Source: Octopus sinensis (Eukaryota). Taken from it: DNA of 64,000 nucleotides. The stretch covers positions 32,736,001-32,800,000 of the forward strand of contig NC_043002.1 in NCBI RefSeq assembly GCF_006345805.1. Direction: 5' to 3'. How positions within the stretch are numbered: the first letter of the stretch is position 1; every line of letters begins with the position of its first letter. Below are positions 47 to 63,877 of the stretch, one piece after another. The notes under the pieces are model-generated. The model made no database searches and was not told the DNA's origin. It was given only the letters and a program-made list of their open reading frames with translations. Position numbers and translations under genes: made by a program.

Positions 47-364
47 CTCTGTTGTTCCTATTAGAGAATAATGTCGTATATTTTCCCATGTAACCAAAAG
101 TGCCCAAATAGATTGGAAATTATTAATATTTGCATACATTTTAATTTTTGCATCAATTTCTGTCAGTTTATTCGATACATTGCTATTTATTCCATTTGTT
201 GTGTAATTTTCATAAATGCTGTATTTAACTTGCTTAAACTCATTCCAAAGGTCTGCCCAGTATGGAGCAATAACATAGTCTGTATCGTCAGATAAACTAT
301 GCGGCTCGTAGCTGAGCCTAGTATCTCTTCTGATATTATCTGATAAATATCCACCAGCGTAGAT
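47..364 (-). CDS. NIDO domain exon, module 2 (IYAGGYLS...IAPYWADL...[11 protein letters not shown])
   Basis: ttttgtcag acceptor, gtaagt donor, 318 nt, phase 0-0; paralog of 58764-59069. Confidence 0.9.
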
Positions 365-2372
365 CTGACAAAACAAAATTACATAACATAGTTGAGAACA
401 ATTAGGTCATTAAAAGGTGTTTATATTGGCATTGCAATCAAAGGATTTTCAATTAAAAGTTTCTAATTATAATTAGACATCTGCCCAAGGTACAGCGGGA
501 GATCACATGGTTGCAAAGTTAGTCTTTAACACCATAGCTATGATATTTTGTTAGCTTTTATTTCCCTTTCTCTTATAAATTATTACGCTTTTAATAAAAT
601 ATAAATAAACAATCGTATATAATGATATTAATCGCTTAATTTTATATGTATATATATATATATGAAATTTCACAACAGTTATCTAAGGTACAATACCTAC
701 AGTATAAAAAGGTGGATTTGCTTGAATATTATAGCAAAGAAATATATCTATTTCTTTATTGCCCACAGGGGACTAAACAGAGGGGACAAACAAGGAGAGA
801 CAAAGGGTTTAAGTCGATTACATCGACCCCAGTGCGTAACTGGTACTTATTCAATCAAGCCCGAAAGGATGACAGACGAAGTCGACCTCGGCAGAGTTTG
901 AACGTAACGGCAGACGAAATATTGCTAAGCATTTCGCCCGGTGTGCTAACGATTCTGCCAGCACACCGGCCTTAGGAAAGAAATATATCAGAACCACAAA
1001 AACAGCACGGTTCCGCAGATGATAAGTGAAGAGGCAAAAACTACCAAATTTATCTGAGATTATCCAGTTACAGATAAAACTTTAATTACTAAATTAGGAA
1101 TGTACGAAAGGAATGTTGTGGTGGGATCTAAGTGTTATAACGCAAACTAGTACATACGTGAAAGCAATTCAGTCTTCTTTGTCCTACGTTGATATCAATT
1201 GACGGGCAAATGTATGGTGATCGGAAACCATAAAAGTCTCGTGCTTCATTGTGTTGGAGCAATGCTGTAAAATGGGGAAAAGAAACAAAAATTGAAAAGA
1301 TTATTATTTCAATCATAAAAGCTAATGTATAAAGGGTGAGGACCTGTGTCCGTAACTATTTCGGATCCACCCATGTAATGGAGAGTGAGGCAATGATCCT
1401 AATTCAACCGTGTCATTTCAATGATATGTAAAACGTGTTCAACTCTGTATAGGAGAGAGAAGAAAGGGAGAGACAGAGTGGGATGGGGAGAGAGAGAGAG
1501 AGAGAAAGAAAGCATTATCTTTTGATTGGCATACCATGCGGATTTTTTTTTTTTTGTTATAAATGTACGAGGATTATTATATAAAATGTGAATGTGAGAA
1601 CCATCCTTAATGTTTGTAAAAATTGTTGGGATCCAGTTTACTTTCATGTACAAACTTAGTTTAAAAGATATACATAGAATATTTAGCCAAGGGAAAATAA
1701 CAAGTGGGAATAGAGAAAGATAGTTAGGATGTTGAGAAAGATGGCTCGGCTGTTGCGGAGGATGGTAAGGATGTTGTGCTCCCGATTATAAGGACCGATC
1801 AGCCGGCGTGTTATGCTCTTGAGCAAGTTACTTTATCTTACATTACTGTATTCTACTCTTCTGTCAATGAGCATCTGATAAGAGCACTGATGCTGCATCA
1901 CTCTCTCCATCCAGGATGTTCCACTAGGTCAAGAGTAGAAGAGCACAGAGCTACATGGTTACGTAAAACAACTAACGAAAACATGGTGCTATTTATTGAA
2001 TCATATTCGTTTCACAGTGGCAGCTATGTTGTCATTATTTATTTTTGCGGTAACTCAATTTAGTGCAGACACATCGCATCTAATACCGTTATTAGTCTAA
2101 AATGTTCAGTCAATTACATTAATACTTTTCGTAGCACTACCCCATTATTCAAGAAAATAGTTCACTCTGGAGACTTCTGAGGTCAATATCTTGTGACATA
2201 TTTTAAATTCTTTACCCTTATATTTTTTTTTACTTCCAAAAGACATGATTTCCGGGTAAAGCCGCGTGGTACGTTAGACAAGTATCTTCTACTGTAACCT
2301 CGCTGATCAAAGACTTGTGAGCGGAATCGGTGAGCGGAAAAGGTTGGCATATGCATGAATGTATATATATAA

Positions 2373-2429
<57 letters not shown>

Positions 2430-4918
2430 AATCCTGACGGTTGGCATAATAACGAAACTAAAGCATGCAAAGTAAAGCTACCTGGCACAGATTGACCTTG
2501 AACTCTGCCCTACATGTGCACTCATTTTTAACTCCTAGCTCACTTCCTCTGTTTACAGCAGTACTTGTAAGGAATGTGTGTAGCGCATGATCATCGCATT
2601 GGCTCTGACAGAGAAAGTTGAGCAAAGAATCTGCCTTAAATTTTGCCAAATGCTTGGTGATACCTACTCAGAGCCCTACGCAAAGGTTTCAAAAATTTTC
2701 ATCGTGCTCGACACAATGAAAGAGATCTTGTACAACTGAAACTTGAGTGTCTTCTTGCTCAGCTAAAACCAGTTTTGGTATAAATTTGACAGACACGCGT
2801 CTCATCTCCAAATCTTAGTTGATAATGGACTAAACTGAACTGTAACTAGTCTGCACATCCTCTGATAACTCACGATGGTGATTTGACGATTTCCCTCCAC
2901 AGCTGCACGCACATCTGTGATGTTTTTCTCAGTTCTGCTGGTTGCGGGTCTCCGAGAACATTCGTGAATATCGACATTTTTTCGGCGATGTTGGGAACAT
3001 CTGAATCTCTCGTACACTTGTGTGCGGCGCATACACTCTTCTCCATACACTTTCTGCCACTTTGTGTAGGCCCCTGAGCAAGTATCGCCATGACAACTTT
3101 CTCTGCCATGGTGAATGCGACAATCACACGCTACACACCTTCCTTCAAATCACTGCTGTGAGCAACCGGAGTGGGATAGAACGTAAAAACCTGGTGCGCA
3201 TGTACAGAAAAGTTTAAGGTCAATCCTCGCCAAGCAACAGTCCGGGTACTTATTGATCAGACCTCGTATATGTAATGTAGATAGGGTTAAAATCGGAGCG
3301 GATTTCCTTTTGAAGCACATCTGCCTATTCTAGTATTCTAAACCCGTACGCAGATTTTATATTTCCTTGAGGTATGCATACTGGAAAATGCATCCAAGTT
3401 AGAGGTACAGCGATGGGAACCAGATTGGTCCCCGTTTATGTGAACACTGTAATGTGATACATAGAATACAAGTGTACCAAAGAGTAGAGGAAAACTTCGG
3501 CACTGAATTTACAAGGTATATTGAAAATGCATGGAAGAGATACTTTGATGATTGCTTCATAATCTGGATGAAATCTGTAAATAGTCTAGAAGAATTTAAT
3601 ATCCTTTTGAACAATCTGCATCCAGCTCTCCAATTTACAAAGTAGATGAGTAGTACCAAATTTCCATTTCTAGACATATTGGTAATTAAACGTAACACTT
3701 CCATCACACTGATATATACTATAAACACACAAACACGCATCAATACCCAAACTGTAAATCGTACCACCTCACACATACAAAACGTAATATCCTATACTGC
3801 CTAGCCAGAAATATTTGTACCATTGTAGAAAATATGAATATCAGAGACAAAACGCCTAACAGAGCTCAAAGAGTTTCTACTCAAACAAAGATACCCGTCT
3901 CTTCTTTTGGAAAATGGTATACAGTGTGTTATAGGGCAACCCAGAAACGAGCAAAACAAGAACAAGTCATACTCAATCCGTGTCACTAAAATATCTTTAG
4001 CATTGCCAAAGTAAACTTGCCGGTCATTGCACAAGGTAATCAATTAAAGCATATAATCACTGCTCGAGTTAATGATTCTAAGTAAAAGGCAGTCGAAGAA
4101 CTTGAAACAATTATTAACAAAAGCAAAATTTGACCTCGGCAACAATGACGAATCGTTCTTTGTATCTCAATGCAAGATAGTTGATGTGGTACATGTCAGT
4201 TCATGCACACCGGACAATACATGAACACAAAAGCCGGAAGAATATTTACAAATGCACATATAAGCTGCAAAAGCTGAAATGTAATTTGCTGCATCAAGTG
4301 CCCGAATTGTGAAGAGATATACACTGGTCAGACAGGGAACGCATTATCAGAACGTTCAAGTGTACACCAACAACAAATTAAGGACCCTGGTGTCCATCAG
4401 ATCCCGTTAAGCAACCATCTGGCAAAAGGTACTCAGGTACAACATTGACTTTCTGGAAAATTGCAACAATACAATTCAATGAAAACAGTTATATTGTTTA
4501 TAACATTTCAAAATATAGCCAAGCAATTATTCTTCTAGATGCGGTCAAAGTAAAGAATCTTTGATGTACCACCAAGCCATGACATCCAAGCTGCACACTA
4601 ATTGACTAAAATATTTCGTAGAAAAAAGCAGGGTAAATGCTAACCAAGCTGGTGCATTCACCACACCGTGACATCTAAGCCACATACTAACTGTTCAAAA
4701 GATTCAGTCAAATGGAGCCCACCGGATGGTACTTAAAAGAAAAATGTAACCATTTCACTACATTTGTGGGACACGACTGTCACTACATAAACCTGAAAGT
4801 ACTAGTTTATTTCAATGTTGTAAATTTATAAAAACTAAATAATTAAACGTGAAAATAAGACTTAGATGGAATTTCAGTGATTGATATATTCTTCTATACA
4901 CAATCATACAAATTCGGA

Positions 4919-5015
<97 letters not shown>

Positions 5016-5141
5016 GTCTGTCTGTCTGTCTATCTGTCTGTCTGTCTGTCTGTCTCTCTCTATCTCTCTGTCTATCTATCTGTCAATCTATCTATCTATG
5101 TATCTATTTATCGATCTATGTATCCGAATGTACCCACACGT

Positions 5142-5228
<87 letters not shown>

Positions 5229-8120
5229 TGTGTCATAAAATCAAAATGGAGAACAAAGTAAATTTGTAGAAGCCAGAAATTTAAGAGTGAATAAGAACAT
5301 GTTGACATATGTATTTACTTTCAATGTCTTTTTATTTGAAAGATAACGCTTTGTAATTCAATAATAAACGAGCTAATCATTTTAATTAATAAATTGACAT
5401 GCTTTACAGGCAAAACAACTATACTCACCTGATGGGGGACAATATTTTGTTGTTGTTTGTGTCGGTATCTTCGTTGTGTATTTTGTTGTAGGATTTAAAG
5501 TCGACAAAGTAGAGGTTTGGTAAAATGTGGTTTGAGTTGGAGAAGTAGATGTTGAAGCTGCATTGGTTCCTATGAGAAATAAAAACTTGTTATATAAAAT
5601 TGTCGTAACATATGACAGGTTCATTTCAAAATTTCTAGGATTTTCTGTCTTAAGTAGATTTCTTTTTTTCCTGCAGCAAAGCTACGTTCGAGGAAATAAA
5701 GATTGAGAGAAGGCATTCTTAACTGCGAGGAAAATGATATAGTTAAGATAACTAAAATATATTTATATTAAGAGGTGTTAATACAGAGCGTATTTTAATG
5801 TGACTAAATTATATGTTCTGGAATATGCTTAGAGTGACAGGAAATAATTGATGTACGATATGAGGTAGCTACAATATACAGAATAATTCTAATGATTTTT
5901 AAAGTAAACGCTACTATATATAGAAATATATAAATGTAACCAAAATATGTATAAAAACCAGGCAGTCTCATAATTACCACGATGCTAAGAAAACTTAAGT
6001 ATAAATTTTAATTATCAAACAGCAGTATTATTTTTCTATTTGCGAATACAACAATTTTCTAGCATAACTATACCGTTGACACAAAATACAGGTATCGACA
6101 AAGATTATTCTCTTGAATAAAATCAATTCAATATGGAAAGAAGGACAAGTGAGACTTACATTTGTCAACATAGGCTATAATTCTGCGTTAAACTAATTTG
6201 GGACGACAGTATTTCATTTTAATAAAGTTCGATAGGTAGTTGAAATATACGTACCATTCGTCACGGATGTTGTAAAACTTGTGCCCTGGGCAGCAGTGGA
6301 TGAAAGACTTGCCGCCGTGGTTTGTAAGGTCTTTGTTGATGGTGCCATTGTTGTTACATCTGATGACATAGAGGATGTTGAGGGACGTGTAGTTTTCTCT
6401 GTTGATGCAGTGATTGTTGTTACATCTGATGACATAGACGATGTTGAATATTGTGTCGAAGGAGCGGTGGTTTTGTCTGCTGATGCAGTATTGGTTGTTA
6501 CATCTGATGACATCGATGATGTTAAATATTGTGTCGAGGGAGCGGTGGTTTTGTCTGTTGATGCAACGCCTGTTGTTACATCTGATGACATAGACGATGT
6601 TGAATATTGTGTCGAGGGACCGGTGGTTTTGTCTGTTGATGCAACGCCTGTTGTTACATCTGATGACATAGACGATGTCGAATATTGTGTCGAGGGACCG
6701 GTGGTTTTGTCTGTTGATGCAACGCCTGTTGTTACATCTGATGACATCGAGGATGTTGAATATTGTGTTGAGGGACCTGAAGTTTGGTCAGTTGATGGTG
6801 CGATTGTTGTTACATCTGATGACATCGAGGATGTTAAATATTGTGTCGAGGGAGCGGTGGTTTTGTCTGTTGATGCAACGCCTGTTGTTACATCTGATGA
6901 CATCGAGGATGTTGAATATTGTGTAGAGGGACCTGAAGTTTGGTCAGTTGATGATGCGATTGTTGTTACATCTGATGACATCGAGGATGTTGAATATTGT
7001 GTAGAGGGACCTGAAGTTTGGTCAGTTGATGATGCGATTGTTGTTACATCTGATGACATCGAGGATGTTGAATATTGTGTCGAGGGACCTGAAGTTTGGT
7101 CAGTTGATGATGCGATTGTTGTTACATCTGATGACATCGAGGATGTTGAATATTGTGTTGAGGGACCTGAAGTTTGGTCAGTTGTTGATGCGATTGTTGT
7201 TACATCAGATGACATCGATGATGTTGAATATTGTGTTGAGGGACCTGAAGTTTGGTCAGTTGATGATGCGATTGTTGTTACATCTGATAACATCGAGGAT
7301 GTTGAATATTGTGTTGAGGGACCTGAAGTTTGGTCAGTTGTTGATGCGATTGTTGTTACATCAGATGACATCGATGATGTTGAATATTGTGTAGAGGGAC
7401 CTGAGGTTTGGTCAGTTGATGATTCGATTGTTGTTACATCTGATAACATCGAGGATGTTGAATATTGTGTTGAGGGACCTGAAGTTTGGTCAGTTGTTGA
7501 TGCGATTGTTGTTACATCAGATGACATCGATGATGTTGAATATTGTGTAGAGGGACCTGAAGTTTGGTCAGTTGATGGTGCGATTGTTGTCACATCTGAT
7601 GACATCGAGGATGTTGAATATTGTGTAGAGGGACCTGAAGTTTGGTCAGTTGATGGTGCGATTGTTGTTACATCGGATGACATAGAGGATGTTGAATATT
7701 GTGTAGAGGGACCTGAAGTTTGGTTAGTTGATGGTGCGATTGTTGTTACATCGGATGACATCGAGGATGTTGAATATTGTGTAGAGGGACCTGAAGTTTG
7801 GTCAGTTGATGGTGCGATTGTTGTTACATCTGATGACATAGAGGCTGTTGAATATTGTGTCGAGGGACCTGAAGTTTGGTCAGTTGATGGTGCCATTGTT
7901 GTTACATCAGATGACATCGGGGATGATGAATATTGTGTCGAGGGACCTGAAGTTTGGTCAGTTGTTGATGCCATTGTTGTTACATCGGATGACATAGAGG
8001 CTATTGAATACTGTGTGGAGTTGTAAGAAATTTGGTCAGTTGGTTGGGTGTCTGTTGAAAATTCTGTTGATGGATTGCTTGTTGTCAGATTTGTAGTCAT
8101 AGAGTTGGTTGAATATTCTG
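47..8120 (-). CDS. Module 2: mucin tandem-repeat exon, Thr-rich linker and start of a second NIDO domain; 4 exons, continues beyond window start
   Basis: Exons 8120-6255, 5569-5429, 1264-1158 and 364-47 splice in frame (phases 1,1,1,0,0); the last two are paralogs of 62084-61978 and 59069-58764. Confidence 0.87.
749..976 (-). mobile_element. tRNA-derived octopod-type SINE with 13-bp target-site duplication
   Basis: Same sequence family as 17262, 45649 and 50913; AAAGAAATATATC at 736-748 and 977-989. Confidence 0.85.
1158..1264 (-). CDS. NIDO N-terminal exon, module 2 ([36 protein letters not shown])
   Basis: ttttacag acceptor, gtatgt donor, 107 nt; same length and phases as paralog 61978-62084. 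Confidence 0.87.
2430..2720 (+). mobile_element. Mariner-like transposon 5' fragment
   Basis: Reads [16 protein letters not shown], the typical mariner transposase N-terminus; boundaries approximate. Confidence 0.6.
2780..3268 (-). mobile_element. Mariner-like transposon 5' fragment with terminal inverted repeat
   Basis: Minus strand starts TACGAGGTCTGATCAATAAGTACCCGGACT (mariner-type TIR); degenerate HTH region [15 protein letters not shown]...[13 protein letters not shown]; inner boundary approximate. Confidence 0.72.
3290..4460 (+). mobile_element. Decayed Penelope-like retroelement (RT plus GIY-YIG endonuclease)
   Basis: [34 protein letters not shown] motifs, then a degenerate [22 protein letters not shown]-like segment; stops and frameshifts. 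Confidence 0.8.
4920..5232. repeat. Compound microsatellite (TATC)n/(TGTC)n/(TG)n/(AG)n
   Basis: Directly visible; source of spurious ORFs 4877-5308. Confidence 0.95.
5429..5569 (-). CDS. Thr-rich linker exon ([15 protein letters not shown]...TTKYCPPS)
   Basis: tttttatttctcatag acceptor, gtgagt donor, 141 nt, phase 1-1. Confidence 0.85.
6255..8120 (-). CDS. Mucin (PTS) tandem-repeat exon, 78-bp/26-aa unit ([26 protein letters not shown])
   Basis: Open 1866-nt exon; tcttctcattctacag acceptor (CAGCAG, alternative start 8117); gtacgt donor; 22 SDVTT motifs. Confidence 0.9.
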
Positions 8121-9097
8121 CTGTAGAATGAGAAGACATGTGTTGATAATCCACTAACACAATTCATGTTAAGAATAAAGCATTACAAAATTAGTGTAAG
8201 TGTTTTATCTAAAGTTGAATGCGACACATTTGTTAATCAATTCAAATAAATCAAACTGATAATTGTAAGAAGATTTGTAGATCAGAGCAAACATTTGTTT
8301 CATCTCACGTACTTTACTTATTCACTGGAGTAAACCCAGAAACCATGACTTTATCTCCTACCTCCTAAAACAGAGAAATAACAAATACACGCGCGCACAT
8401 ATATATGCATACATGTTCATAAATACATATACATATGTATATATACATACACACATACATATACATACATGTATACGTATATATACATGCATATATATAT
8501 ATATATATATATAATATATATATATATATAATTGATATACATACATAAATATATATTAATATATTCTATTGTGTCTGGGGAGAGTTATTAATTTAACACA
8601 CTCACTACTCTGGTTTCCGCTTATTTACTTGTTATTTTTTACTAAAATATTCATTGTCACTTGCAACCCTTTCAATGGCTGTTGATTCTGTCCGTTATCA
8701 GAATTGCGTTCTTTGCTTTGTTGTACGCATGCGTGTGTGTCAGTGTGCCAGCACTTACACACATGTATGTATTTATGTATGTATGTATGTATGTATGTAT
8801 GTATGTATGTATGTATGTATGTATGTATATATGTATTATGTATGTATGTATGTGTGTATGTGTGTGTGCATACATGTGTGTGCATTCCTATATGTATATG
8901 TATGCATGTGTGCACATTTGTATATACTCTGCATGTATGTATTTGTATGCAGATACATATATATGTATGCATGTGTGCACGTTTGAATGTATGTATGTAT
9001 GTTTATATGTATATGTGTGTGTGTGAGTGTGTGTGTGACCTTAGTAAATTCTGCCCCACCAGGTCACAAAGGGGAAACCACACACCACCTCGGCGGC

Positions 9098-9215
9098 GAA
9101 AGTGAACCATAATCTATCTATTGTTACATGTTTATAAATACATTTACATACATGCATATATATTGATGTATATACATTAATGTGTATCTCTTATTATAAA
9201 TATATATATATATAT

Positions 9216-9249
<34 letters not shown>

Positions 9250-9272
9250 ATATTTATACATACACACACACA

Positions 9273-9309
<37 letters not shown>

Positions 9310-9911
9310 TAATGTATATACATCAATATATATGCATGTATGTAAATGTATTTATAAACATGTAACAATAGATAGATTATGGTTCACTTTCACTGTTTCA
9401 AGCGTTTTTCATTGATAAATCGAAATGTTACATCATGCAAAGAAATAAAACGGCTTCATATATATATATGCACTTACATACATACAAACATGCATACATA
9501 CATACATGCATGCATACATACATACATACATAAATACATACATACATACATGCATGCATACATACATACATACATAAATACATACATACATACATGCATG
9601 CATACATACATACATACATACATACATACATACATACATACATACATACATACATACATGTATGCATGCATGCATATTTGCATATATATCACAGAAATTT
9701 TGATAACTAAGTGAAACTTACGCGTAGTCGTTACAGTAGAAGGTATATGTGTTGTTGTGACTGTATCTGCAAAAAAATAATAATAATATACGCATTTTCA
9801 ATGTTTGAATGTACATTCATTCATAAACATATAAACACACAAACACACACACACACACAAATATATATATATAATATATATATATATATTTATACATACA
9901 CACACACAAAC

Positions 9912-9978
<67 letters not shown>

Positions 9979-10483
9979 TAATGTATATACATCAATATAT
10001 ATGCATGTATGTAAATGTATTTATAAACATGTAACAATAGATAGATTATGGTTCACTTTCACTGTTTCAAGCGTTTTTCATTGATAAATCGAAATGTTAC
10101 ATCATGCAAAGAAATAAAACGGCTTCATATGTATATATGCACTTACATACATACAAACATGCATACATACATACATGCATGCATACATACATACATACAT
10201 AAATACATACATACATACATGCATGCATACATACATACATACATACATACATACATACATACATACATACATACATACATACATACATACATACATACAT
10301 GTATGCATGCATGCATATTTGTATATATATCACAGAAATTTTGATAACTAAGTGAAACTTACGCGTAGTCGTTACAGTAGAAGGTATATGTGTTGTTGTG
10401 ACTGTATCTGCAAAAAAATAATAATAATATACGCATTTTCAATGTTTGAATGTACATTCATTCATAAACATATAAACACACAA

Positions 10484-10502
<19 letters not shown>
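9098..10502. repeat. 86-bp inverted repeat (9098-9183/9306-9391) overlapping a ~0.64-kb tandem duplication (9253-9858/9889-10502)
   Basis: Direct sequence comparison; the copies differ mainly in microsatellite length. Confidence 0.85.
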
Positions 10503-10541
<39 letters not shown>

Positions 10542-11118
10542 GGAGAGAGAGGGGGAATATAAAAGAAAGATACCACGCAGGAGATAAAAACAAGGAGAGA
10601 AAGTGAGAGAGAGAGAATCTGGTCGGCAACGTAGTGAATTGCATTTAGATGGTCTAAAGTCATAAAGTTATGAATGCATCATTATTTCTCCAGATATCCA
10701 ATTGGCTCTAACATCTGTCAATGATGTGCCCTGTCAAGGTTGAAGAATGACGAAGAGATAATAAATGGTGATTTTAATTCTAAAAGCAGAGAGAAAGGGT
10801 ACAAAATAATCACTCAGACATATGCACTCTCTCCCCCTCTCCCCACCCACTCTGTGTCTCCGTCCCTTCTCTCTCTCTCTCTCTCTGTTCCTTTCACTTG
10901 CTATTTCACTCTCTGTCTCACTCTTTCTGTCTCTCTCTATCTCTCACTCACACTTTCTTATGCATACACACAAGTTAACATCTGAATATATTTAGTTGCT
11001 CTCCATCACAATCTTGTTTTTAAGATTCGCACTTATTTCCATTGATTACATTTTAAAACAATCAATTAGTCAGTCAATCAATTTTCTCTTTGAATCTCTC
11101 CATCTCTCTCTCTCTCTT

Positions 11119-11152
<34 letters not shown>

Positions 11153-13289
11153 ATCTAACTATCTATCTCGTTTTCTACACACACGCTCGCACATATAAGG
11201 GAATCAAAACGTAAATTAAGGGTTAGGACGTTGTACACACGATCACAAGACCCCCCCCCCAGGCGAGTTTTGTGTGTAGTTATTGAGCAACAAAAAACCA
11301 ACACTCCATTTCACGCTGTCCTAGTCGACTCACCGGGAAATATATAACCATGTGGCGACTAGTGTTCCTTTCGTGGGAAAAGATGGCCTGACCGCCGAGC
11401 CAGCGGGCCATTACCATTCAAAGTTACAACAATGCGAGAAAAAATAAAATGAGCAGTGAATAACAACATCCGATACTCTGATATATATATACCGGGGTCT
11501 CCTAACGATAATGTAAACTTCATATTACCAAGGTATCCTTGTCCTGAACAGTGGCTTGCAGTCTAAACCTCGTTTGGCTAATTTAGTCTTTCCGTGGACC
11601 GGCTAGCTATGAAATTATGTAGCCTGGATTTTATATACTCCATCAATATTCTGGATATTTATTTGCATATGCAACCGTTAACTATAAATTAACTTTTTTC
11701 AGCTTATTGTACTTTCATTCGAGAAAAATTAACAACCTTCTGTGCCAATGGACCACTGTTGTTCCTGAAAGCAGTTTTGTAATATTTTCAACGATATATG
11801 TATGCATGTATGTATGCATGCATTTATGTATGTACGTACATATGTGCATTATGTGTGCACATATGTACATACATACATACATACATACATACATACATAC
11901 ATTCATACATACATACATACATGCATACATACATAATGTATGCAATTGATTTGGATTATTTGGTGGAAAAGACAATTCGAATCATACCTGTGCAGTTTCC
12001 ACTGATATGGTCGCATGATTCTCTGCAAGGACATGTCAAAGCGCAATCTTTCGCGTACTTCTTCACAGGACAAACTAAAATTGTTACAGAAACAAAGAAT
12101 TCATTATTTTTCATTTAAAAGAAAGAGAATATATTATGGTGTCAGAGGAGATGATGGGGTTAGTGAAGATACGGTGGTGGTGGTGGTGGTGGTGGTTGTA
12201 ATATCTATGTTAATGGTTGTTGTGGTATGTATGAATGGTGATTGTGATGGTGGCGGTGTTACTGGTTGTGATGAAATTAGTGATGATGTGAGGGTAATAA
12301 TGGCGATAGAAGTGTTGTTAGATATAGGGGTGGCGTTACAGATGGCGATGGTTGCGTTTGTGCTGATGTTTATAGTGTTGATTAATGTTAATAGTTTTTA
12401 TGGATGAACTTGTTGTGGTGATGGAGGGGTCATCGTCGTCGTCGTCATGGTTGTAGTGGGTCTTCTGATGGTGGGTGGGGATTATAGTAATCGTAGAAAT
12501 GACTAAGGTGGTCGTGGTGATTTCAGTGGTGGTTGTGAAGTTAACAGTGGCGGCAATGATTACTGTTATTGTTTTGATTTTCCTGTTTCTATTTCATCTA
12601 GCTGACCTATGGCGAAAGACATTGCACCCAGCCCAGTCAATCATTTTTATTTCACAGATTATGAATACTTGATTTACATTTTTATTGTCTTTTCTGAAGA
12701 TATCAGAGTCTTCTATGATGAAGACTCTGGTTATATTTCCAATAACAATATAGTACCTCCCTCGTTGGCCCGTTCCAACTATAGGTTCTTCAATCAACAT
12801 TTTTAATGATACAAGCACAAGTAACTTGATCGGTAAATAGGCTTTAAATTATAGGACAGGTAGTTATAACTCTCCTAGATTATTGCAAATTTATTTTACC
12901 ATTCTATACATATAGTACGCTGAACTGCCTACATTTTATTCCAGATTTAAAGTAAAGGCTATAACAGAACTTTGAAGACACCCAACAAAACAATTTTTAT
13001 TAAAAATAACTAGTTTTCGGAAAAGAGTCGGGACAGGACAAAGTGGAAGCCCGCCACACAATATTCATCATCATCATTGTTCGACCATGGTCGAGACAAT
13101 GGAATTTACCATGCTACGCCAGAATTCACGGTCCATCATAGCATTACGGAGGTCCTGTTGCTGGATGCCTGTATCCCTGGAGATTACACACGATATTGCT
13201 TTATGTTAAAATGTCTGAAAATGCTACAGAAACTTATGAAATGCTTCCGATTACTTGTCGATTAATGTGTGTCAACTAAGCATCTGTTT

Positions 13290-14205
13290 TTTGACGGTGC
13301 ATAAGGTTCATGATCTATAGAGAAGCGATAATAAACAATGTGGGACGTCAGAAGATCAGAGCTAGTTGAGAAAATATGCAATTTTCTGGGTGAAGACTGT
13401 CGTCTGTATAAAAGCAATAAGCGAACAGTTTGGAGTTGGTGCCGCAACTGTGCACAAAATTATTTTAAGAAATGAACATGCGCAAAATTTTGCAAAGTTT
13501 GTTTCTAGGTTATGTAGTTATGAATGGATAGAAGATGACGTTGGTGACAGCAGGAAGATGATCGACGTCATTCTCTCCAATCTAAGAGTACTTGAGTCTC
13601 TAGTGACCTGTTACGAAAGCTGGATCTACTGTTATGGTTTACAGGCCAAGGGACGGAGTACCCAATGGGGCCAACAAGATCAGACAAAGCTAATCTACCG
13701 GAATCTCTTGATGGTACTCTTTTCCGATAACAAGTGCCTCATCTACATCTACTGGGATTCCTCTGGGCAGATAGTCAACAAAAAGGAGGCTTTTAGGGAA
13801 TTGTAGAAGAGAATTCGTCGCAACAAGCCATAGCACTTGTACCTGTTTAATTTACTAGTATACAATTCCATTCTGATAACCAACTAATTGATAGCGATGG
13901 ACAGCAAAACGGTTCCCAACTCTCCCAACAGTCTAGACCTTGCTCCCTCACTTTTGATTCTTCCAAACTGAAGAACCTCAAAGGGCGGTCGTTTTGAAGG
14001 AATCGAGAAGATGAAGGAAATTGTGACTACGGTCTTGGATACCTTCAGTTGAATAACTTCCATGTGGCCTTTCATGAAGTGGCTGGCGTGCTACAACAAA
14101 TGCACTGAAGGGAGAGGATCCTTCTTTAAATTAGACTAGGGTTTTGTACTTTCAATTTAGTGTCTCTCCTGGAAAATTCTCAAAACCTCTGTAATGCATC
14201 TCGTA
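13290..14205 (+). mobile_element. Decayed mariner transposon
   Basis: LVTCYESWIYCY (cf. IVTGDEKW), LMVLFSDNKCLI, PDLAPS-like segment; ends ...ctcgta; left boundary approximate. Confidence 0.7.
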
Positions 14206-14348
14206 GATGAAAAAAAATTATAAATCTATCATTGTTTCTACTAGCTAACAACAATCCTAAAATATTGGTTGTAACAATAATATTTAGAGAACCAAAATAT
14301 AACACATTAGAATAAAACAAACAATCAACGAGTATATGTAAAACTTAC

Positions 14349-62084
<47,736 letters not shown>

Positions 62085-62746: not shown

Positions 62747-62796
<50 letters not shown>

Positions 62797-62798
62797 AT

Positions 62799-63128
62799 AT
62801 TATATATAAGGGCTTAGTAAAATAAATTACTTTGCCACATACTGAACTCATTAGAAATAGCAGCTAAAGAAATTTCTTTAGCTATTTCTAATACTTAAAG
62901 AAGATCTCTCTCAGATAGTGTTTGCTCAAACCAACTCACAAATAACCTTTGCACTTGATTTTTTAATGTTTTTTCCCCCATACCTTTGTGAGTTGGTTTG
63001 AGCAAACACTATCTGAGAGAGATCTTCTTTAAGTATTAGAAATAGCTAAAGAAATTTCTTTAGCTGCTATTTCTAATGAGTTCAGTATGTGGCAAAGTAA
63101 TTTATTTTACTAAGCCCTTATATATAAT
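62799..63128. mobile_element. MITE-like foldback: 144-bp inverted arms with a 42-bp spacer
   Basis: 62799-62942 is the reverse complement of 62985-63128; sits at the edge of a (TA)n tract. Confidence 0.6.
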
Positions 63129-63495
63129 GTAATATTTTGAATTCGCCTAAAATGGTCCCTTTACATACTGAATACTTGGTGAAATTGATTAATAATTAAT
63201 TAATTTTACCCTCAATTGTTGAAATTATAATTCATTTCTCTCTGTTTAATGCTTCGGTTTTCACCGATAAAACATAGTGTTTGTCAATTTTAACCCACGC
63301 TGGTGGAAAGGGGAGAGCAGAAATTCTTCGCTTGCATATTTTGAATTTGATAGCACTTTTAGTTCGAGCGGAATTCTAGAGGTGATAAGAAGCCAAAAGG
63401 GTATGCTCCCACTTTCAGTGTTCCCAAATCCGAATCAAGGAGTTCTGAGCTGACGAAAGAAATGTCGATTTGACTAATCTAGAAACGTACGTTCT

Positions 63496-63877
<382 letters not shown>

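What the first reader, a model, noticed from the sequence alone, without database searches (positions are those of the whole stretch)
47..62084. Possible giant repeated-module mucin: NIDO-AMOP-VWD-EGF module runs in phase into a mucin repeat and a second NIDO, with no membrane anchor between
Seen: module 1 ends at a perfect phase-1 donor (14349). The next convincing minus-strand exon is the mucin exon with a phase-1 acceptor (8120), which splices in frame to a second NIDO. I found no SEA, transmembrane, cytoplasmic or stop-containing exon, and no convincing signal-peptide exon, in 8.2-14.3 kb. Known: vertebrate MUC4 has a single PTS-NIDO-AMOP-VWD-EGF-TM pass. Inference: either (A) one protein with at least two concatenated PTS-NIDO-AMOP-VWD-EGF modules, or (B) two tandem paralogs whose ends I missed. 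A weak first-exon candidate for (B) is 11469-11415 (MLLFTAHFIFSRIVVTLNG, phase-1 donor), which may simply be repeat-derived.
Basis: partly seen in the sequence, partly recalled or inferred. Interest (0 to 1): 0.78.

Follow-up and report, generated by a model that had tools for sequence, protein, structure and literature searches.

The report
Two-module MUC4-like octopus mucin gene

Summary
The window is Octopus sinensis. Its exons match RefSeq XP_036359396.1, "mucin-4-like, partial", at 98-100%.

I rebuilt 29 minus-strand exons (62084 to 47). They give 2170 codons with no stop, apart from one 1-nt deletion at 26254.

No juxtamembrane, transmembrane, cytoplasmic, stop-bearing or homologous signal-peptide exon lies between the last EGF exon (ends 14349) and the mucin exon (acceptor 8120).

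- a six-cysteine exon at 12074-11988;
- two identical 45-nt linker exons at 10407-10363 and 9766-9722.

RefSeq splices through these into the mucin exon.

In O. bimaculoides the same two modules lie in the same order. A signal peptide is seen only before the first. Juxtamembrane and transmembrane exons are seen only after the second.

One two-module protein is therefore favoured, at about 0.6, but it is unproven:
- I had no transcript data;
- the RefSeq model spans 357 kb and probably hops between paralogs;
- recent evolution of the exons looks nearly neutral;
- Pfam does not detect AMOP.

Similar two-module, single-anchor proteins are predicted in sharks, rays, a sea urchin and a bivalve. This is a new variant of a known kind, of moderate interest.

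The parts
61978..62084 (-). Exon 1 seen in the window (pre-[14 protein letters not shown]...NYFR). It enters in phase 1, so further upstream exons (PTS, signal peptide) lie outside the window.
   Evidence: Acceptor ttacag, donor GTATGT. 79% identical to O. bimaculoides P0001.
57921..59069 (-). Exons 2-3 (59069-58764, 58134-57921): NIDO domain of module 1.
   Evidence: Pfam NIDO E=1.9e-16, 61 bits, above the cut-off. Splice sites.
51374..54029 (-). Exons 4-5 (54029-53827, 51587-51374): Cys- and Trp-rich region in the position that AMOP holds in MUC4.
   Evidence: No Pfam AMOP hit. Aligns to the same region of lamprey mucin-4, P0023, E=3e-8.
45269..48753 (-). Exons 6-8 (48753-48499, 48060-47917, 45472-45269): VWD domain. 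The GDPH motif lies at 48742-48731.
   Evidence: Pfam VWD E=3.3e-13. The sequence reads [14 protein letters not shown].
40874..41113 (-). Exon 9: C8-3_MUC4 domain.
   Evidence: Pfam PF23263 E=1.2e-9.
14349..39262 (-). Exons 10-22: an Ig-like segment, then the EGF-like array. Exons: 39262-39055, 36600-36443, 34514-34350, 31492-31376, 29234-29100, 27468-27352, 26978-26865, 26435-26182, 24405-24286, 23547-23416, 21069-20950, 17157-17038, 14600-14349.
   Evidence: Junction-by-junction splice model. EGF_CA and cEGF Pfam hits on P0035, which matches these exons at 98-100%.
26253..26254 (-). 1-nt deletion (TTT to TT) in exon 17 that shifts the frame. The exon is intact in O. vulgaris. RefSeq XP_036359396.1 starts exactly here.
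11988..12074 (-). Reading through its donor gives GMIRIVFSTK and a stop.
   Evidence: ttttag acceptor, GTATGA donor. 73-79% identical to O. bimaculoides P0005 and P0001 at the same position, with all six Cys kept. Used by P0035. Read-through.
10363..10407 (-). Linker mini-exon, copy A (DTVTTTHIPSTVTTT, 45 nt, phase 1 at both ends).
   Evidence: tttttttgcag acceptor, GTAAGT donor. One copy is used in P0035.
9722..9766 (-). Linker mini-exon, copy B, identical to copy A. It belongs to a 640-bp tandem duplication (9202-9898 and 9861-10538).
   Evidence: O. vulgaris has one copy with intact splice sites.
6255..8120 (-). Mucin (PTS) exon of module 2: 622 codons, 78-nt repeat x 21.1, Ser 29%, Thr 25%, no Cys, no stop.
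   Evidence: 99.8% identical to P0035.
5429..5569 (-). Second PTS exon, ending ...TTTKYCPPS.
   Evidence: P0035 match.
1158..1264 (-). Pre-NIDO exon of module 2, paralog of 62084-61978.
47..364 (-). First NIDO exon of module 2, paralog of 59069-58764 (84% nt identity). The rest of module 2 lies beyond the window.
11415..11469 (-). It belongs to the rival explanation only.
   Evidence: Unique sequence, 95% conserved with the ORF kept in O. vulgaris. No similarity to the real signal-peptide exon of P0155. About four comparable chance candidates per 64 kb.
11658..11663 (-). The only AATAAA in the 3.9-kb junction interval, about 290 nt after the read-through stop of exon 23. A possible alternative poly(A) signal.
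   Evidence: window-wide density is 1.4 per kb.

Best explanation
The window holds most of one gene for a MUC4-type, membrane-tethered mucin with two concatenated modules.

Inferred order: signal peptide and first PTS region (upstream, outside the window); module 1 (NIDO, Cys-rich AMOP-position region, VWD with GDPH, C8-3_MUC4, Ig-like segment, about 13 exons of EGF-like repeats, a six-Cys exon); one or two 15-residue Thr-rich linker exons; a second PTS region of about 670 residues; module 2; then juxtamembrane region, one transmembrane helix and a cytoplasmic tail (downstream, outside the window).

Origin, inferred: an intragenic tandem duplication with breakpoints in introns. Because the exons are phase-1 symmetric, the copy stayed in frame.

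Function, inferred from MUC4 and from a skin-mucus proteome: a heavily O-glycosylated surface or mucus glycoprotein. Each VWD carries GDPH, so the precursor may be cut in each module.

Shown here: the exons, their phases, the open frame, the domains, the absence of recognisable terminal or first exons at the junction, and synteny in three octopus species.

Inferred: that the transcript really runs through, and everything about processing and function.
For: 1. A 29-exon model gives 2170 codons with no stop and canonical splice sites throughout.
2. RefSeq XP_036359396.1 (P0035) matches the window exons at 98-100%. It joins 14349 to 12074-11988, to one mini-exon, to 8120, and on to the second NIDO.
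3. The independent O. vulgaris model CAI9724667 (P0004) chains the same exons, although in a shifted frame.
4. No juxtamembrane, TM, tail or signal-peptide exon is found at the junction. The same queries find them in O. bimaculoides.
5. Only one AATAAA lies in the 3.9-kb junction interval.
6. The window is collinear with O. bimaculoides L004 (module A, 85-92% including introns) and then with L003 (module B). The spacing fits direct adjacency.
7. Module A starts with a clear signal peptide (P0155). Module B's mucin exon starts directly in PTS sequence.
8. Juxtamembrane exons and a TM exon (L003 65522...LILGLGIGISAAVILLVIILLCIWFKWKKKN) follow module B only.
9. The O. vulgaris assembly has the same junction.
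10. Two-module proteins with an internal PTS region and a single C-terminal TM are predicted in Scyliorhinus, Hemitrygon, Mobula and Diadema; a two-module Mya arenaria model also has a single C-terminal TM.
11. The locus product A0A7E6EUU4 (LOC115213197) is listed among proteins detected in octopus skin mucus (PMC11431876).
Against: - No transcript or junction read was available. A search of 5.8 billion proteins with a junction query found only one genomic read-through ORF.
- P0035 is 5'-partial and spans 357 kb. Its juxtamembrane part is 81% identical to the next gene (C, L002) but only 43% to module B, so the model probably hops between paralogs and may be homology-driven.
- The window has a frameshift in exon 17.
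- O. sinensis versus O. vulgaris exon changes are 24 nonsynonymous to 5 synonymous, which fits neutrality (p=0.82), not omega 0.2 (p=1e-5). Exon divergence (0.85%) is not below intron divergence (0.66%).
- dN/dS against O. bimaculoides is 0.5-0.75.
- RefSeq splits the O. bimaculoides modules into separate models, although these end at or beside assembly gaps.
- In O. bimaculoides, 4.3 kb of the junction was not sampled and 8.2 kb is N.
Confidence: 0.6

Rival explanations
1. Two separate tandem genes. Gene 1 is a secreted, unanchored one-module mucin-like protein. It ends by reading through the donor of exon 23 (..NCTGMIRIVFSTK, then a stop) and uses the AATAAA at 11663. Gene 2 starts from its own promoter at about 11.5 kb, with the exon 11469-11415 as a non-homologous signal peptide, and splices through the mini-exons into the mucin exon.
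For: - The read-through stop and the single AATAAA are suitably placed.
- The candidate first exon sits upstream of both mini-exons, has a phase-1 donor, and keeps its ORF in O. vulgaris.
- O. bimaculoides RefSeq has separate models. One is a 111-residue model over the last EGF exon running past the locus end, whose size fits termination by read-through.
- Gnomon's merged model is suspect on other grounds.
Against: - The candidate has no similarity to the family's true signal peptide and has an Arg in its hydrophobic core.
- It lies in a stretch that is 95% identical between the species, no better conserved than the flanking DNA. Comparable chance candidates occur about once per 16 kb.
- A poly(A) site and a promoter would have to sit within about 200 bp.
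- Two annotation pipelines chain exon 23 to the mini-exon and the mucin exon.
- The O. bimaculoides model boundaries lie at or beside assembly gaps.
Confidence: 0.22
2. Module 1, or the whole two-module gene, is decaying in this lineage. The 1-nt deletion at 26254 is real, translation stops about 23 codons later, and the open frame elsewhere only reflects the short time since inactivation.
For: - The frameshift is absent from O. vulgaris.
- RefSeq starts its partial model right after it.
- Nonsynonymous to synonymous changes are 24:5, indistinguishable from neutral, and exon divergence is not below intron divergence.
Against: - It is a single-base loss in a TTT run, a common kind of assembly error (general knowledge), and I could not check reads.
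- There are no other stops or frameshifts in 2170 codons.
- One exon indel was seen against 4.5 expected at the intron rate (P=0.06).
- All Cys of exon 23 are kept against O. bimaculoides.
- dN/dS is below 1 over the longer branch.
- A product of this locus is reported in skin mucus of the sister species (PMC11431876).
Confidence: 0.12
3. One gene, but the modules are used as alternative cassettes. Because the exons are phase-1 symmetric, transcripts could skip module 1 or module 2, giving mostly single-module isoforms that share one signal peptide and one anchor.
For: - Exons 12-27 are all phase 1 at both ends.
- Annotation models in three species skip various EGF exons without losing frame.
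Against: Nothing direct. Skipping about 50 kb and more than 20 exons as a block is unusual. I had no isoform data.
Confidence: 0.06

Closest known systems
Vertebrate MUC4 (human and rodent), a transmembrane mucin
   Same: - PTS tandem repeat, then NIDO, a Cys-rich region, VWD with GDPH, C8-3_MUC4 and EGF-like domains.
- A single TM and a short tail in the family's full models.
- GDPH is the putative autocatalytic cleavage site that gives the MUC4 alpha and beta subunits (PMC8660890).
   Different: - Mammalian MUC4 has one module and three EGF domains (PMC8660890).
- Here there are two modules separated by a second PTS region, and about 13 EGF-encoding exons per module.
- Pfam AMOP is not detected.
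- Sequence identity to vertebrate MUC4 is only about 25-31%.
RefSeq XP_036359396.1 / UniProt A0A7E6EUU4, mucin-4-like, partial (Octopus sinensis, LOC115213197)
   Same: It is the automatic annotation of this very locus. It matches the window exons from 26254 to 41 at 98-100% and makes the module 1 to mucin exon to module 2 join.
   Different: - It lacks exons 1-16 and the first part of exon 17 of module 1.
- It uses only one of the two mini-exons.
- It spans 357 kb and probably takes its 3' end from a neighbouring paralog.
- It is a computed model. I found no paper that describes a two-module MUC4-like mucin.
O. bimaculoides XP_052824446.1 (P0155, module A) and XP_014781778.2 (P0002, module B)
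   Same: - Syntenic orthologs of module 1 and module 2, in the same order and with similar spacing.
- A supplies the signal peptide. B is followed by juxtamembrane and TM exons.
   Different: They are annotated as separate, truncated genes whose ends fall at or beside assembly gaps. The junction itself is only partly sampled there.
Predicted two-module MUC4-like proteins in other animals: Scyliorhinus torazame P0135, Hemitrygon akajei P0062, Mobula hypostoma P0075, Diadema setosum P0067, Mya arenaria P0036
   Same: - Two VWD-containing modules and one C-terminal TM in all five; an internal PTS region in the first four.
- P0135 has Pfam NIDO x2, VWD x2 and C8-3 x2; P0062 has NIDO x2.
   Different: - All are automatic models without experimental support known to me.
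- Identity to the octopus protein is 27-36%.
- At least one comparable model (Haliotis asinina P0038) has a TM between its modules and is probably two merged genes.
Acanthosepion pharaonis mucin-like protein (P0008), the single-module cephalopod relative
   Same: Signal peptide, PTS, NIDO, VWD, EGF array, juxtamembrane region, TM and tail in 1481 residues. 42% identical over 90% of module 1.
   Different: It has one module only. It shows what a stand-alone gene of this family looks like.

Membership tests
MUC4-type transmembrane mucin (mucin-like protein family) | Ser/Thr-rich tandem-repeat (PTS) domain | tested here: met
   78-nt unit x 21.1, 91% matches. Ser 29%, Thr 25%, Pro 5%, no Cys, in 621 residues.
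MUC4-type transmembrane mucin (mucin-like protein family) | NIDO domain | tested here: met
   Pfam PF06119 E=1.9e-16, 61 bits against a cut-off of 25. A second copy begins at 364-47.
MUC4-type transmembrane mucin (mucin-like protein family) | AMOP domain between NIDO and VWD | tested here: inconclusive
   No Pfam PF03782 hit even at E<=10. The 133-residue Cys-rich region aligns to the same region of lamprey mucin-4 (E=3e-8). Pfam also reports no AMOP for the shark and ray two-module proteins at E<=0.001.
MUC4-type transmembrane mucin (mucin-like protein family) | VWD domain carrying the GDPH motif | tested here: met
   Pfam PF00094 E=3.3e-13. GDPH at 48742-48731. Cleavage itself is not testable here.
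MUC4-type transmembrane mucin (mucin-like protein family) | Mucin-4-like C8-3 domain | tested here: met
   PF23263 E=1.2e-9.
MUC4-type transmembrane mucin (mucin-like protein family) | EGF-like domains after the VWD region | tested here: met
   EGF_CA, cEGF and FXa_inhibition hits on P0035, which matches the window exons at 98-100%. Cys patterns in exons 11-23.
MUC4-type transmembrane mucin (mucin-like protein family) | Single C-terminal transmembrane helix and short cytoplasmic tail | tested here: inconclusive
   None in the window. Present in P0035 (residue 2458) and after O. bimaculoides module B (L003 65522), outside the window.
MUC4-type transmembrane mucin (mucin-like protein family) | One PTS-NIDO-AMOP-VWD-EGF pass per polypeptide (as in mammals) | tested here: not met
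   Two passes in one open frame in the gene model. Whether they lie in one transcript is inferred, not shown.
SEA-type transmembrane mucins (MUC1, MUC16 and relatives) | SEA domain next to the membrane | tested here: not met
   No Pfam SEA hit in the juxtamembrane region of P0035 at E<=1. I call it juxtamembrane, or SEA-position, only.
Gel-forming mucins / VWF family | Repeated VWD-C8-TIL units and a C-terminal cystine knot | tested here: not met
   Only one VWD per module. No TIL, VWC or CTCK hits.
SUSD2 / Mesh-type proteins | AMOP-VWD followed by Sushi (CCP) domains | tested here: not met
   No Sushi hit. SUSD2-like hits are far weaker (E 1e-14 to 1e-35, against 0 for the mucin-like proteins).

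The most novel reading that the evidence does not exclude
The two-module precursor works as a mucin polyprotein. Each module's VWD carries a GDPH self-cleavage site, so one translation product would be cut twice. This would give a non-covalently linked chain: PTS1-NIDO1; then VWD1-EGFs-PTS2-NIDO2; then VWD2-EGFs-TM. Only the last piece is anchored. The surface glycocalyx would be extended, and large mucin pieces could be shed into skin mucus. If the two-module predictions in elasmobranchs, sea urchin and bivalves are also real, this would be an overlooked architecture of the MUC4 family, either ancient or repeatedly evolved.
Probability: 0.2. Interest if true: 0.65.

Novelty: new variant of a known kind. 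Interest (0 to 1): 0.4.

Why it matters
MUC4 is described in the literature as a single-module membrane mucin. In Lang et al. 2016 (PMC4948705), the most deeply branching animal with a Muc4-like protein is Xenopus tropicalis.

A real octopus protein with two full NIDO-VWD-EGF modules, two PTS regions and one anchor would show that:
- the family is modular;
- it can grow by in-frame intragenic duplication of phase-1 exon blocks;
- it may be processed into several subunits.

It would also flag a practical problem. Annotation pipelines treat such loci inconsistently: merged in O. sinensis, split in O. bimaculoides, frame-shifted in O. vulgaris. Mucin repertoires and proteome identifications in cephalopods are therefore unreliable at these loci.

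If the modules turn out to be separate genes, the finding is an ordinary tandem paralog cluster.

Tried and rejected
1. Deletion/fusion idea. I first took O. bimaculoides L002 (the P0005 gene) as the ortholog of module 1. L002 has linker and juxtamembrane exons after its six-Cys exon, so I inferred a lineage-specific deletion that fused two genes. I dropped this when L004 (the P0155 gene) proved to be the true collinear ortholog at 85-92% including introns, directly followed by L003. The arrangement is shared, not derived.

2. Junction-spanning protein search (last EGF exon + six-Cys exon + start of the mucin exon). It found only one genomic read-through ORF from a Logan contig and no transcript-derived protein.

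3. Walking the O. sinensis and O. vulgaris chromosomes through P0035 and P0006. No DNA was returned because the gene ranges are 357 kb and 163 kb.

4. Skin-mucus proteome supplements. I looked for peptides across the junction and found none. The peptide [13 protein letters not shown], which is in module 1 exon 5 here, is listed under A0A7E6EUU4. It comes from an in-silico digest and is not in that sequence, so it is not evidence.

5. The sigma-70 promoter and terminator scan does not apply to an animal genome. I ignored it.

6. Assigning the second half of P0035 to O. bimaculoides module B or C by windowed identity. The result was mixed and indecisive, except for the juxtamembrane exon.

7. 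Pfam on transposon-like ORFs in the introns. Only a weak RVT_1 hit.

Full report
**What the window is.** The window is AT-rich, microsatellite-laden animal DNA. A draft protein stitched from minus-strand ORF pieces found octopus "mucin-4" and "mucin-like" proteins at 63-76% identity, and mollusc, echinoderm and lamprey relatives at 26-42%. The window aligns at 94-99% to Octopus vulgaris chromosome OX597819.1 (locus L001). Its exons match RefSeq XP_036359396.1 / UniProt A0A7E6EUU4, "mucin-4-like, partial [Octopus sinensis]", at 98-100% (P0035). The window is therefore O. sinensis, and this locus already carries an automatic annotation.

**Gene model.** I used O. bimaculoides and O. sinensis proteins as guides and resolved every junction by splice site, phase and guide fit. 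This gave 29 minus-strand exons from 62084 to 47. All have AG acceptors and GT donors, many of them GTAAGT. From exon 12 to exon 27 every exon is in phase 1 at both ends. The model reads 2170 codons without a stop, apart from one 1-nt deletion.

Pfam confirms the following in module 1:
- NIDO, E=1.9e-16
- VWD, E=3.3e-13
- C8-3_MUC4, E=1.2e-9

EGF_CA and cEGF hits cover the EGF array. The VWD begins [10 protein letters not shown], which contains the GDPH motif. Pfam does not detect AMOP, even at E<=10. The 133-residue Cys/Trp-rich stretch in the AMOP position does align to the same region of lamprey mucin-4 (E=3e-8).

These points are correct:
- The exon ending at 14349 has a GTAAGT donor in phase 1.
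- The mucin exon's acceptor at 8120 is in phase 1.
- The mucin exon is 1866 nt, a 78-nt unit repeated 21.1 times, 54% Ser+Thr, with no Cys and no stop.
- It continues in frame through 5569-5429 and 1264-1158 to a second NIDO exon at 364-47, which is 84% identical in DNA to 59069-58764.
- The junction has no terminal exon. The juxtamembrane, TM and tail segments of O. vulgaris P0006 and cuttlefish P0008 find nothing in the window (best E 0.6-1). A hydropathy scan of 14349-8121 finds only microsatellite-coded strings.
- As a positive control, the same queries find linker, juxtamembrane and TM exons in O. bimaculoides loci at E 1e-10 to 1e-18.

This point is wrong: three exons lie between 14349 and 8120.
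- Exon 23 (12074-11988) encodes ICPVKKYAKDCALTCPCRESCDHISGNCT. It follows the last EGF exon in O. bimaculoides proteins too, with all six Cys kept.
- Two identical 45-nt exons (10407-10363 and 9766-9722) encode DTVTTTHIPSTVTTT. Each has a long polypyrimidine acceptor and a GTAAGT donor. They sit in a 640-bp tandem duplication.
- O. vulgaris has one copy with intact splice sites.
- These mini-exons resemble the Thr-rich linker mini-exons (DDKTTE..PTTEV) that precede the juxtamembrane region in single-module paralogs.

**One gene or two.** P0035 splices 14349 to 12074-11988, to one mini-exon, to 8120, and onward through the second module to a TM and tail. The O. vulgaris model CAI9724667 (P0004) chains the same exons. 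It uses acceptors 14 nt and 35 nt away, so it runs out of frame and stops inside the mucin exon.

Comparative data carry more weight.
- The window from 62334 to 13791 is collinear, introns included, with O. bimaculoides locus L004 at 85-92%. L004 is the gene of XP_052824446.1 (P0155).
- The window from 9100 to 1 is collinear with locus L003, the gene of XP_014781778.2 (P0002), at 80-91%.
- L003 starts 4.3 kb after L004 ends on CM046606.1. The distances match the window once an 8.2-kb run of N is allowed for. The same module A to module B order is therefore shared.
- P0155 begins with a clear signal peptide, MESKMKLTCIIFIALQLIIHTPVTTCLA|QE, which is split over two exons. The second of these continues into PTS sequence.
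- Module 2's mucin exon starts directly in PTS sequence. No homolog of the signal-peptide exon lies upstream of it.
- After module B, O. bimaculoides has two juxtamembrane exons and a TM exon...LILGLGIGISAAVILLVIILLCIWFKWKKKN. Nothing of the kind follows module A in the gap-free O. sinensis window.
- Only one AATAAA occurs in the 3.9-kb junction interval, against 1.4 per kb window-wide.

The simplest reading is one signal peptide, two modules and one anchor. This is the product expected from an intragenic duplication whose breakpoints fell in phase-1 introns.

**Caveats.**
- I had no transcript evidence. A junction query against 5.8 billion proteins returned only one genomic read-through ORF.
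- P0035 is 5'-partial and spans 357 kb. Its juxtamembrane exon is 81% identical to the next O. bimaculoides gene (module C, L002) but only 43% to module B. Its last third was probably borrowed from a neighbouring paralog. That weakens it as a witness.
- The O. vulgaris model P0006 spans 163 kb and is likewise composite.
- The window has a 1-nt deletion (TTT to TT) at 26254 in exon 17. It is absent from O. vulgaris, and P0035 starts exactly there. It may be an assembly error or a real lesion.
- Between O. sinensis and O. vulgaris I count 24 nonsynonymous and 5 synonymous exon changes. This fits neutrality (p=0.82) and does not fit omega 0.2 (p=1e-5).
- Exon divergence (0.85%) is not below intron divergence (0.66%).
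- The only sign of recent constraint is one exon indel against 4.5 expected (P=0.06).
- Against O. bimaculoides, dN/dS is 0.50 for exons 1-16 and 0.75 for exons 17-22. The gene evolves fast.

**The rival.** The two-gene reading is coherent.
- Reading through the exon 23 donor gives a stop after 11 codons.
- The lone AATAAA lies about 290 nt further on.

Against it:
- The candidate bears no resemblance to the family's signal peptide.
- It has an Arg in its hydrophobic core.
- Comparable chance candidates occur about once per 16 kb, so the chance of one in this interval is about 0.2.

My estimates: one two-module gene 0.6, two genes 0.22, a decaying locus 0.12, cassette-type alternative use of the modules 0.06.

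**Comparison with what is known.** The family is the MUC4 / "mucin-like protein" family. Human MUC4 has one module and three EGF-like domains, and is putatively self-cleaved at GDPH into alpha and beta subunits (PMC8660890). The octopus protein shares PTS, NIDO, VWD-GDPH, C8-3 and EGF. It differs in module number, EGF count and sequence.

Two-module architecture is not unique in databases.
- Models from Scyliorhinus, Hemitrygon, Mobula and Diadema show two VWD-containing modules, an internal PTS region and one C-terminal TM; a two-module Mya arenaria model also has a single C-terminal TM, but no PTS-rich window was detected in it.
- Pfam gives NIDO x2, VWD x2 and C8-3 x2 for the Scyliorhinus protein (P0135), and NIDO x2 for the Hemitrygon protein (P0062).
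- A Haliotis model has a TM between its modules and is probably a merge of two genes.
- The cuttlefish relative P0008 is a clean single-module gene.
- I found no paper describing a two-module MUC4-like mucin.
- A skin-mucus proteome of O. vulgaris lists A0A7E6EUU4 (LOC115213197) among detected, differentially abundant proteins (PMC11431876). This fits a role in skin mucus.

**Verdict.** The interpretation "one giant repeated-module mucin" is favoured but unproven. It is already implicit in an automatic annotation and paralleled by predictions in other phyla. I rate it a new variant of a known kind, of moderate interest.

Noticed in passing
window 14348-14284 (minus strand): Reading through the donor after 14349 gives a 21-residue, strongly hydrophobic tail ([21 protein letters not shown]) and then a stop. 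A related Logan contig ORF (P0034) reads similarly. It is probably a by-product of AT-rich intron sequence, but it resembles a membrane or GPI-type tail.
   Followed up: partly
window 62791-63229 and 63493-63786: Two stretches are 98-99% identical in inverted orientation, just upstream of exon 1. This may be a transposon with long inverted ends or an assembly palindrome. It probably explains why module 1's PTS exon is not within the window.
   Followed up: no
L001 41890-41989 (O. vulgaris), equivalent to window 52347: The O. vulgaris assembly has a 100-N gap exactly here. The 42 kb upstream of the gap contains no module exons, so module 1's NIDO and the first exon of its AMOP-position region (exons 1-4) are missing or misplaced in that assembly. 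The first 88 residues of model P0004 come from unrelated sequence.
   Followed up: partly
window 6281-8026 (+) and L001 85777-91402: The mucin repeat is also open on the opposite strand (581 aa). The O. vulgaris annotation calls a 426-aa antisense gene there. This is most likely an artefact of the repeat.
   Followed up: no
window 6255-8120 versus L001 about 85650-86920: The mucin repeat array appears shorter in O. vulgaris (about 1.2-1.3 kb against 1.87 kb), as expected for a variable-number tandem repeat. It was not measured exactly.
   Followed up: partly
window 55127-56336 (minus strand, intron 3): A retrotransposon remnant with reverse-transcriptase motifs (Pfam RVT_1, E=3.5e-5, below the cut-off).
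   Followed up: partly
window 744-974, 17263-17501, 25950-26093, 45656-45888, 48185-48343, 50913-51150: A family of short interspersed repeats of about 230 bp, 75-89% alike, in both orientations inside the introns.
   Followed up: no
window 43118-44556 (+), 15453-15968 (+), 13366-13806 (+): Plus-strand ORFs in the introns. The first two share an LNDLVRDL(N/S)LSK motif. They look transposon-derived, but none has a Pfam hit at E<=0.01.
   Followed up: partly
L004 85376-86128 (O. bimaculoides): A separate 111-residue gene model starts in the last EGF exon of module A and runs past the locus end. Its size fits that exon plus the six-Cys exon plus a short read-through. This shows how fragmented the O. 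bimaculoides annotation is here.
   Followed up: no
PMC11431876, supplementary file 9: The in-silico peptide [13 protein letters not shown] is listed under A0A7E6EUU4 but is absent from that sequence. It is present in module 1 exon 5 of this window. Accessions in that table seem to label homologous entries from other databases.
   Followed up: yes
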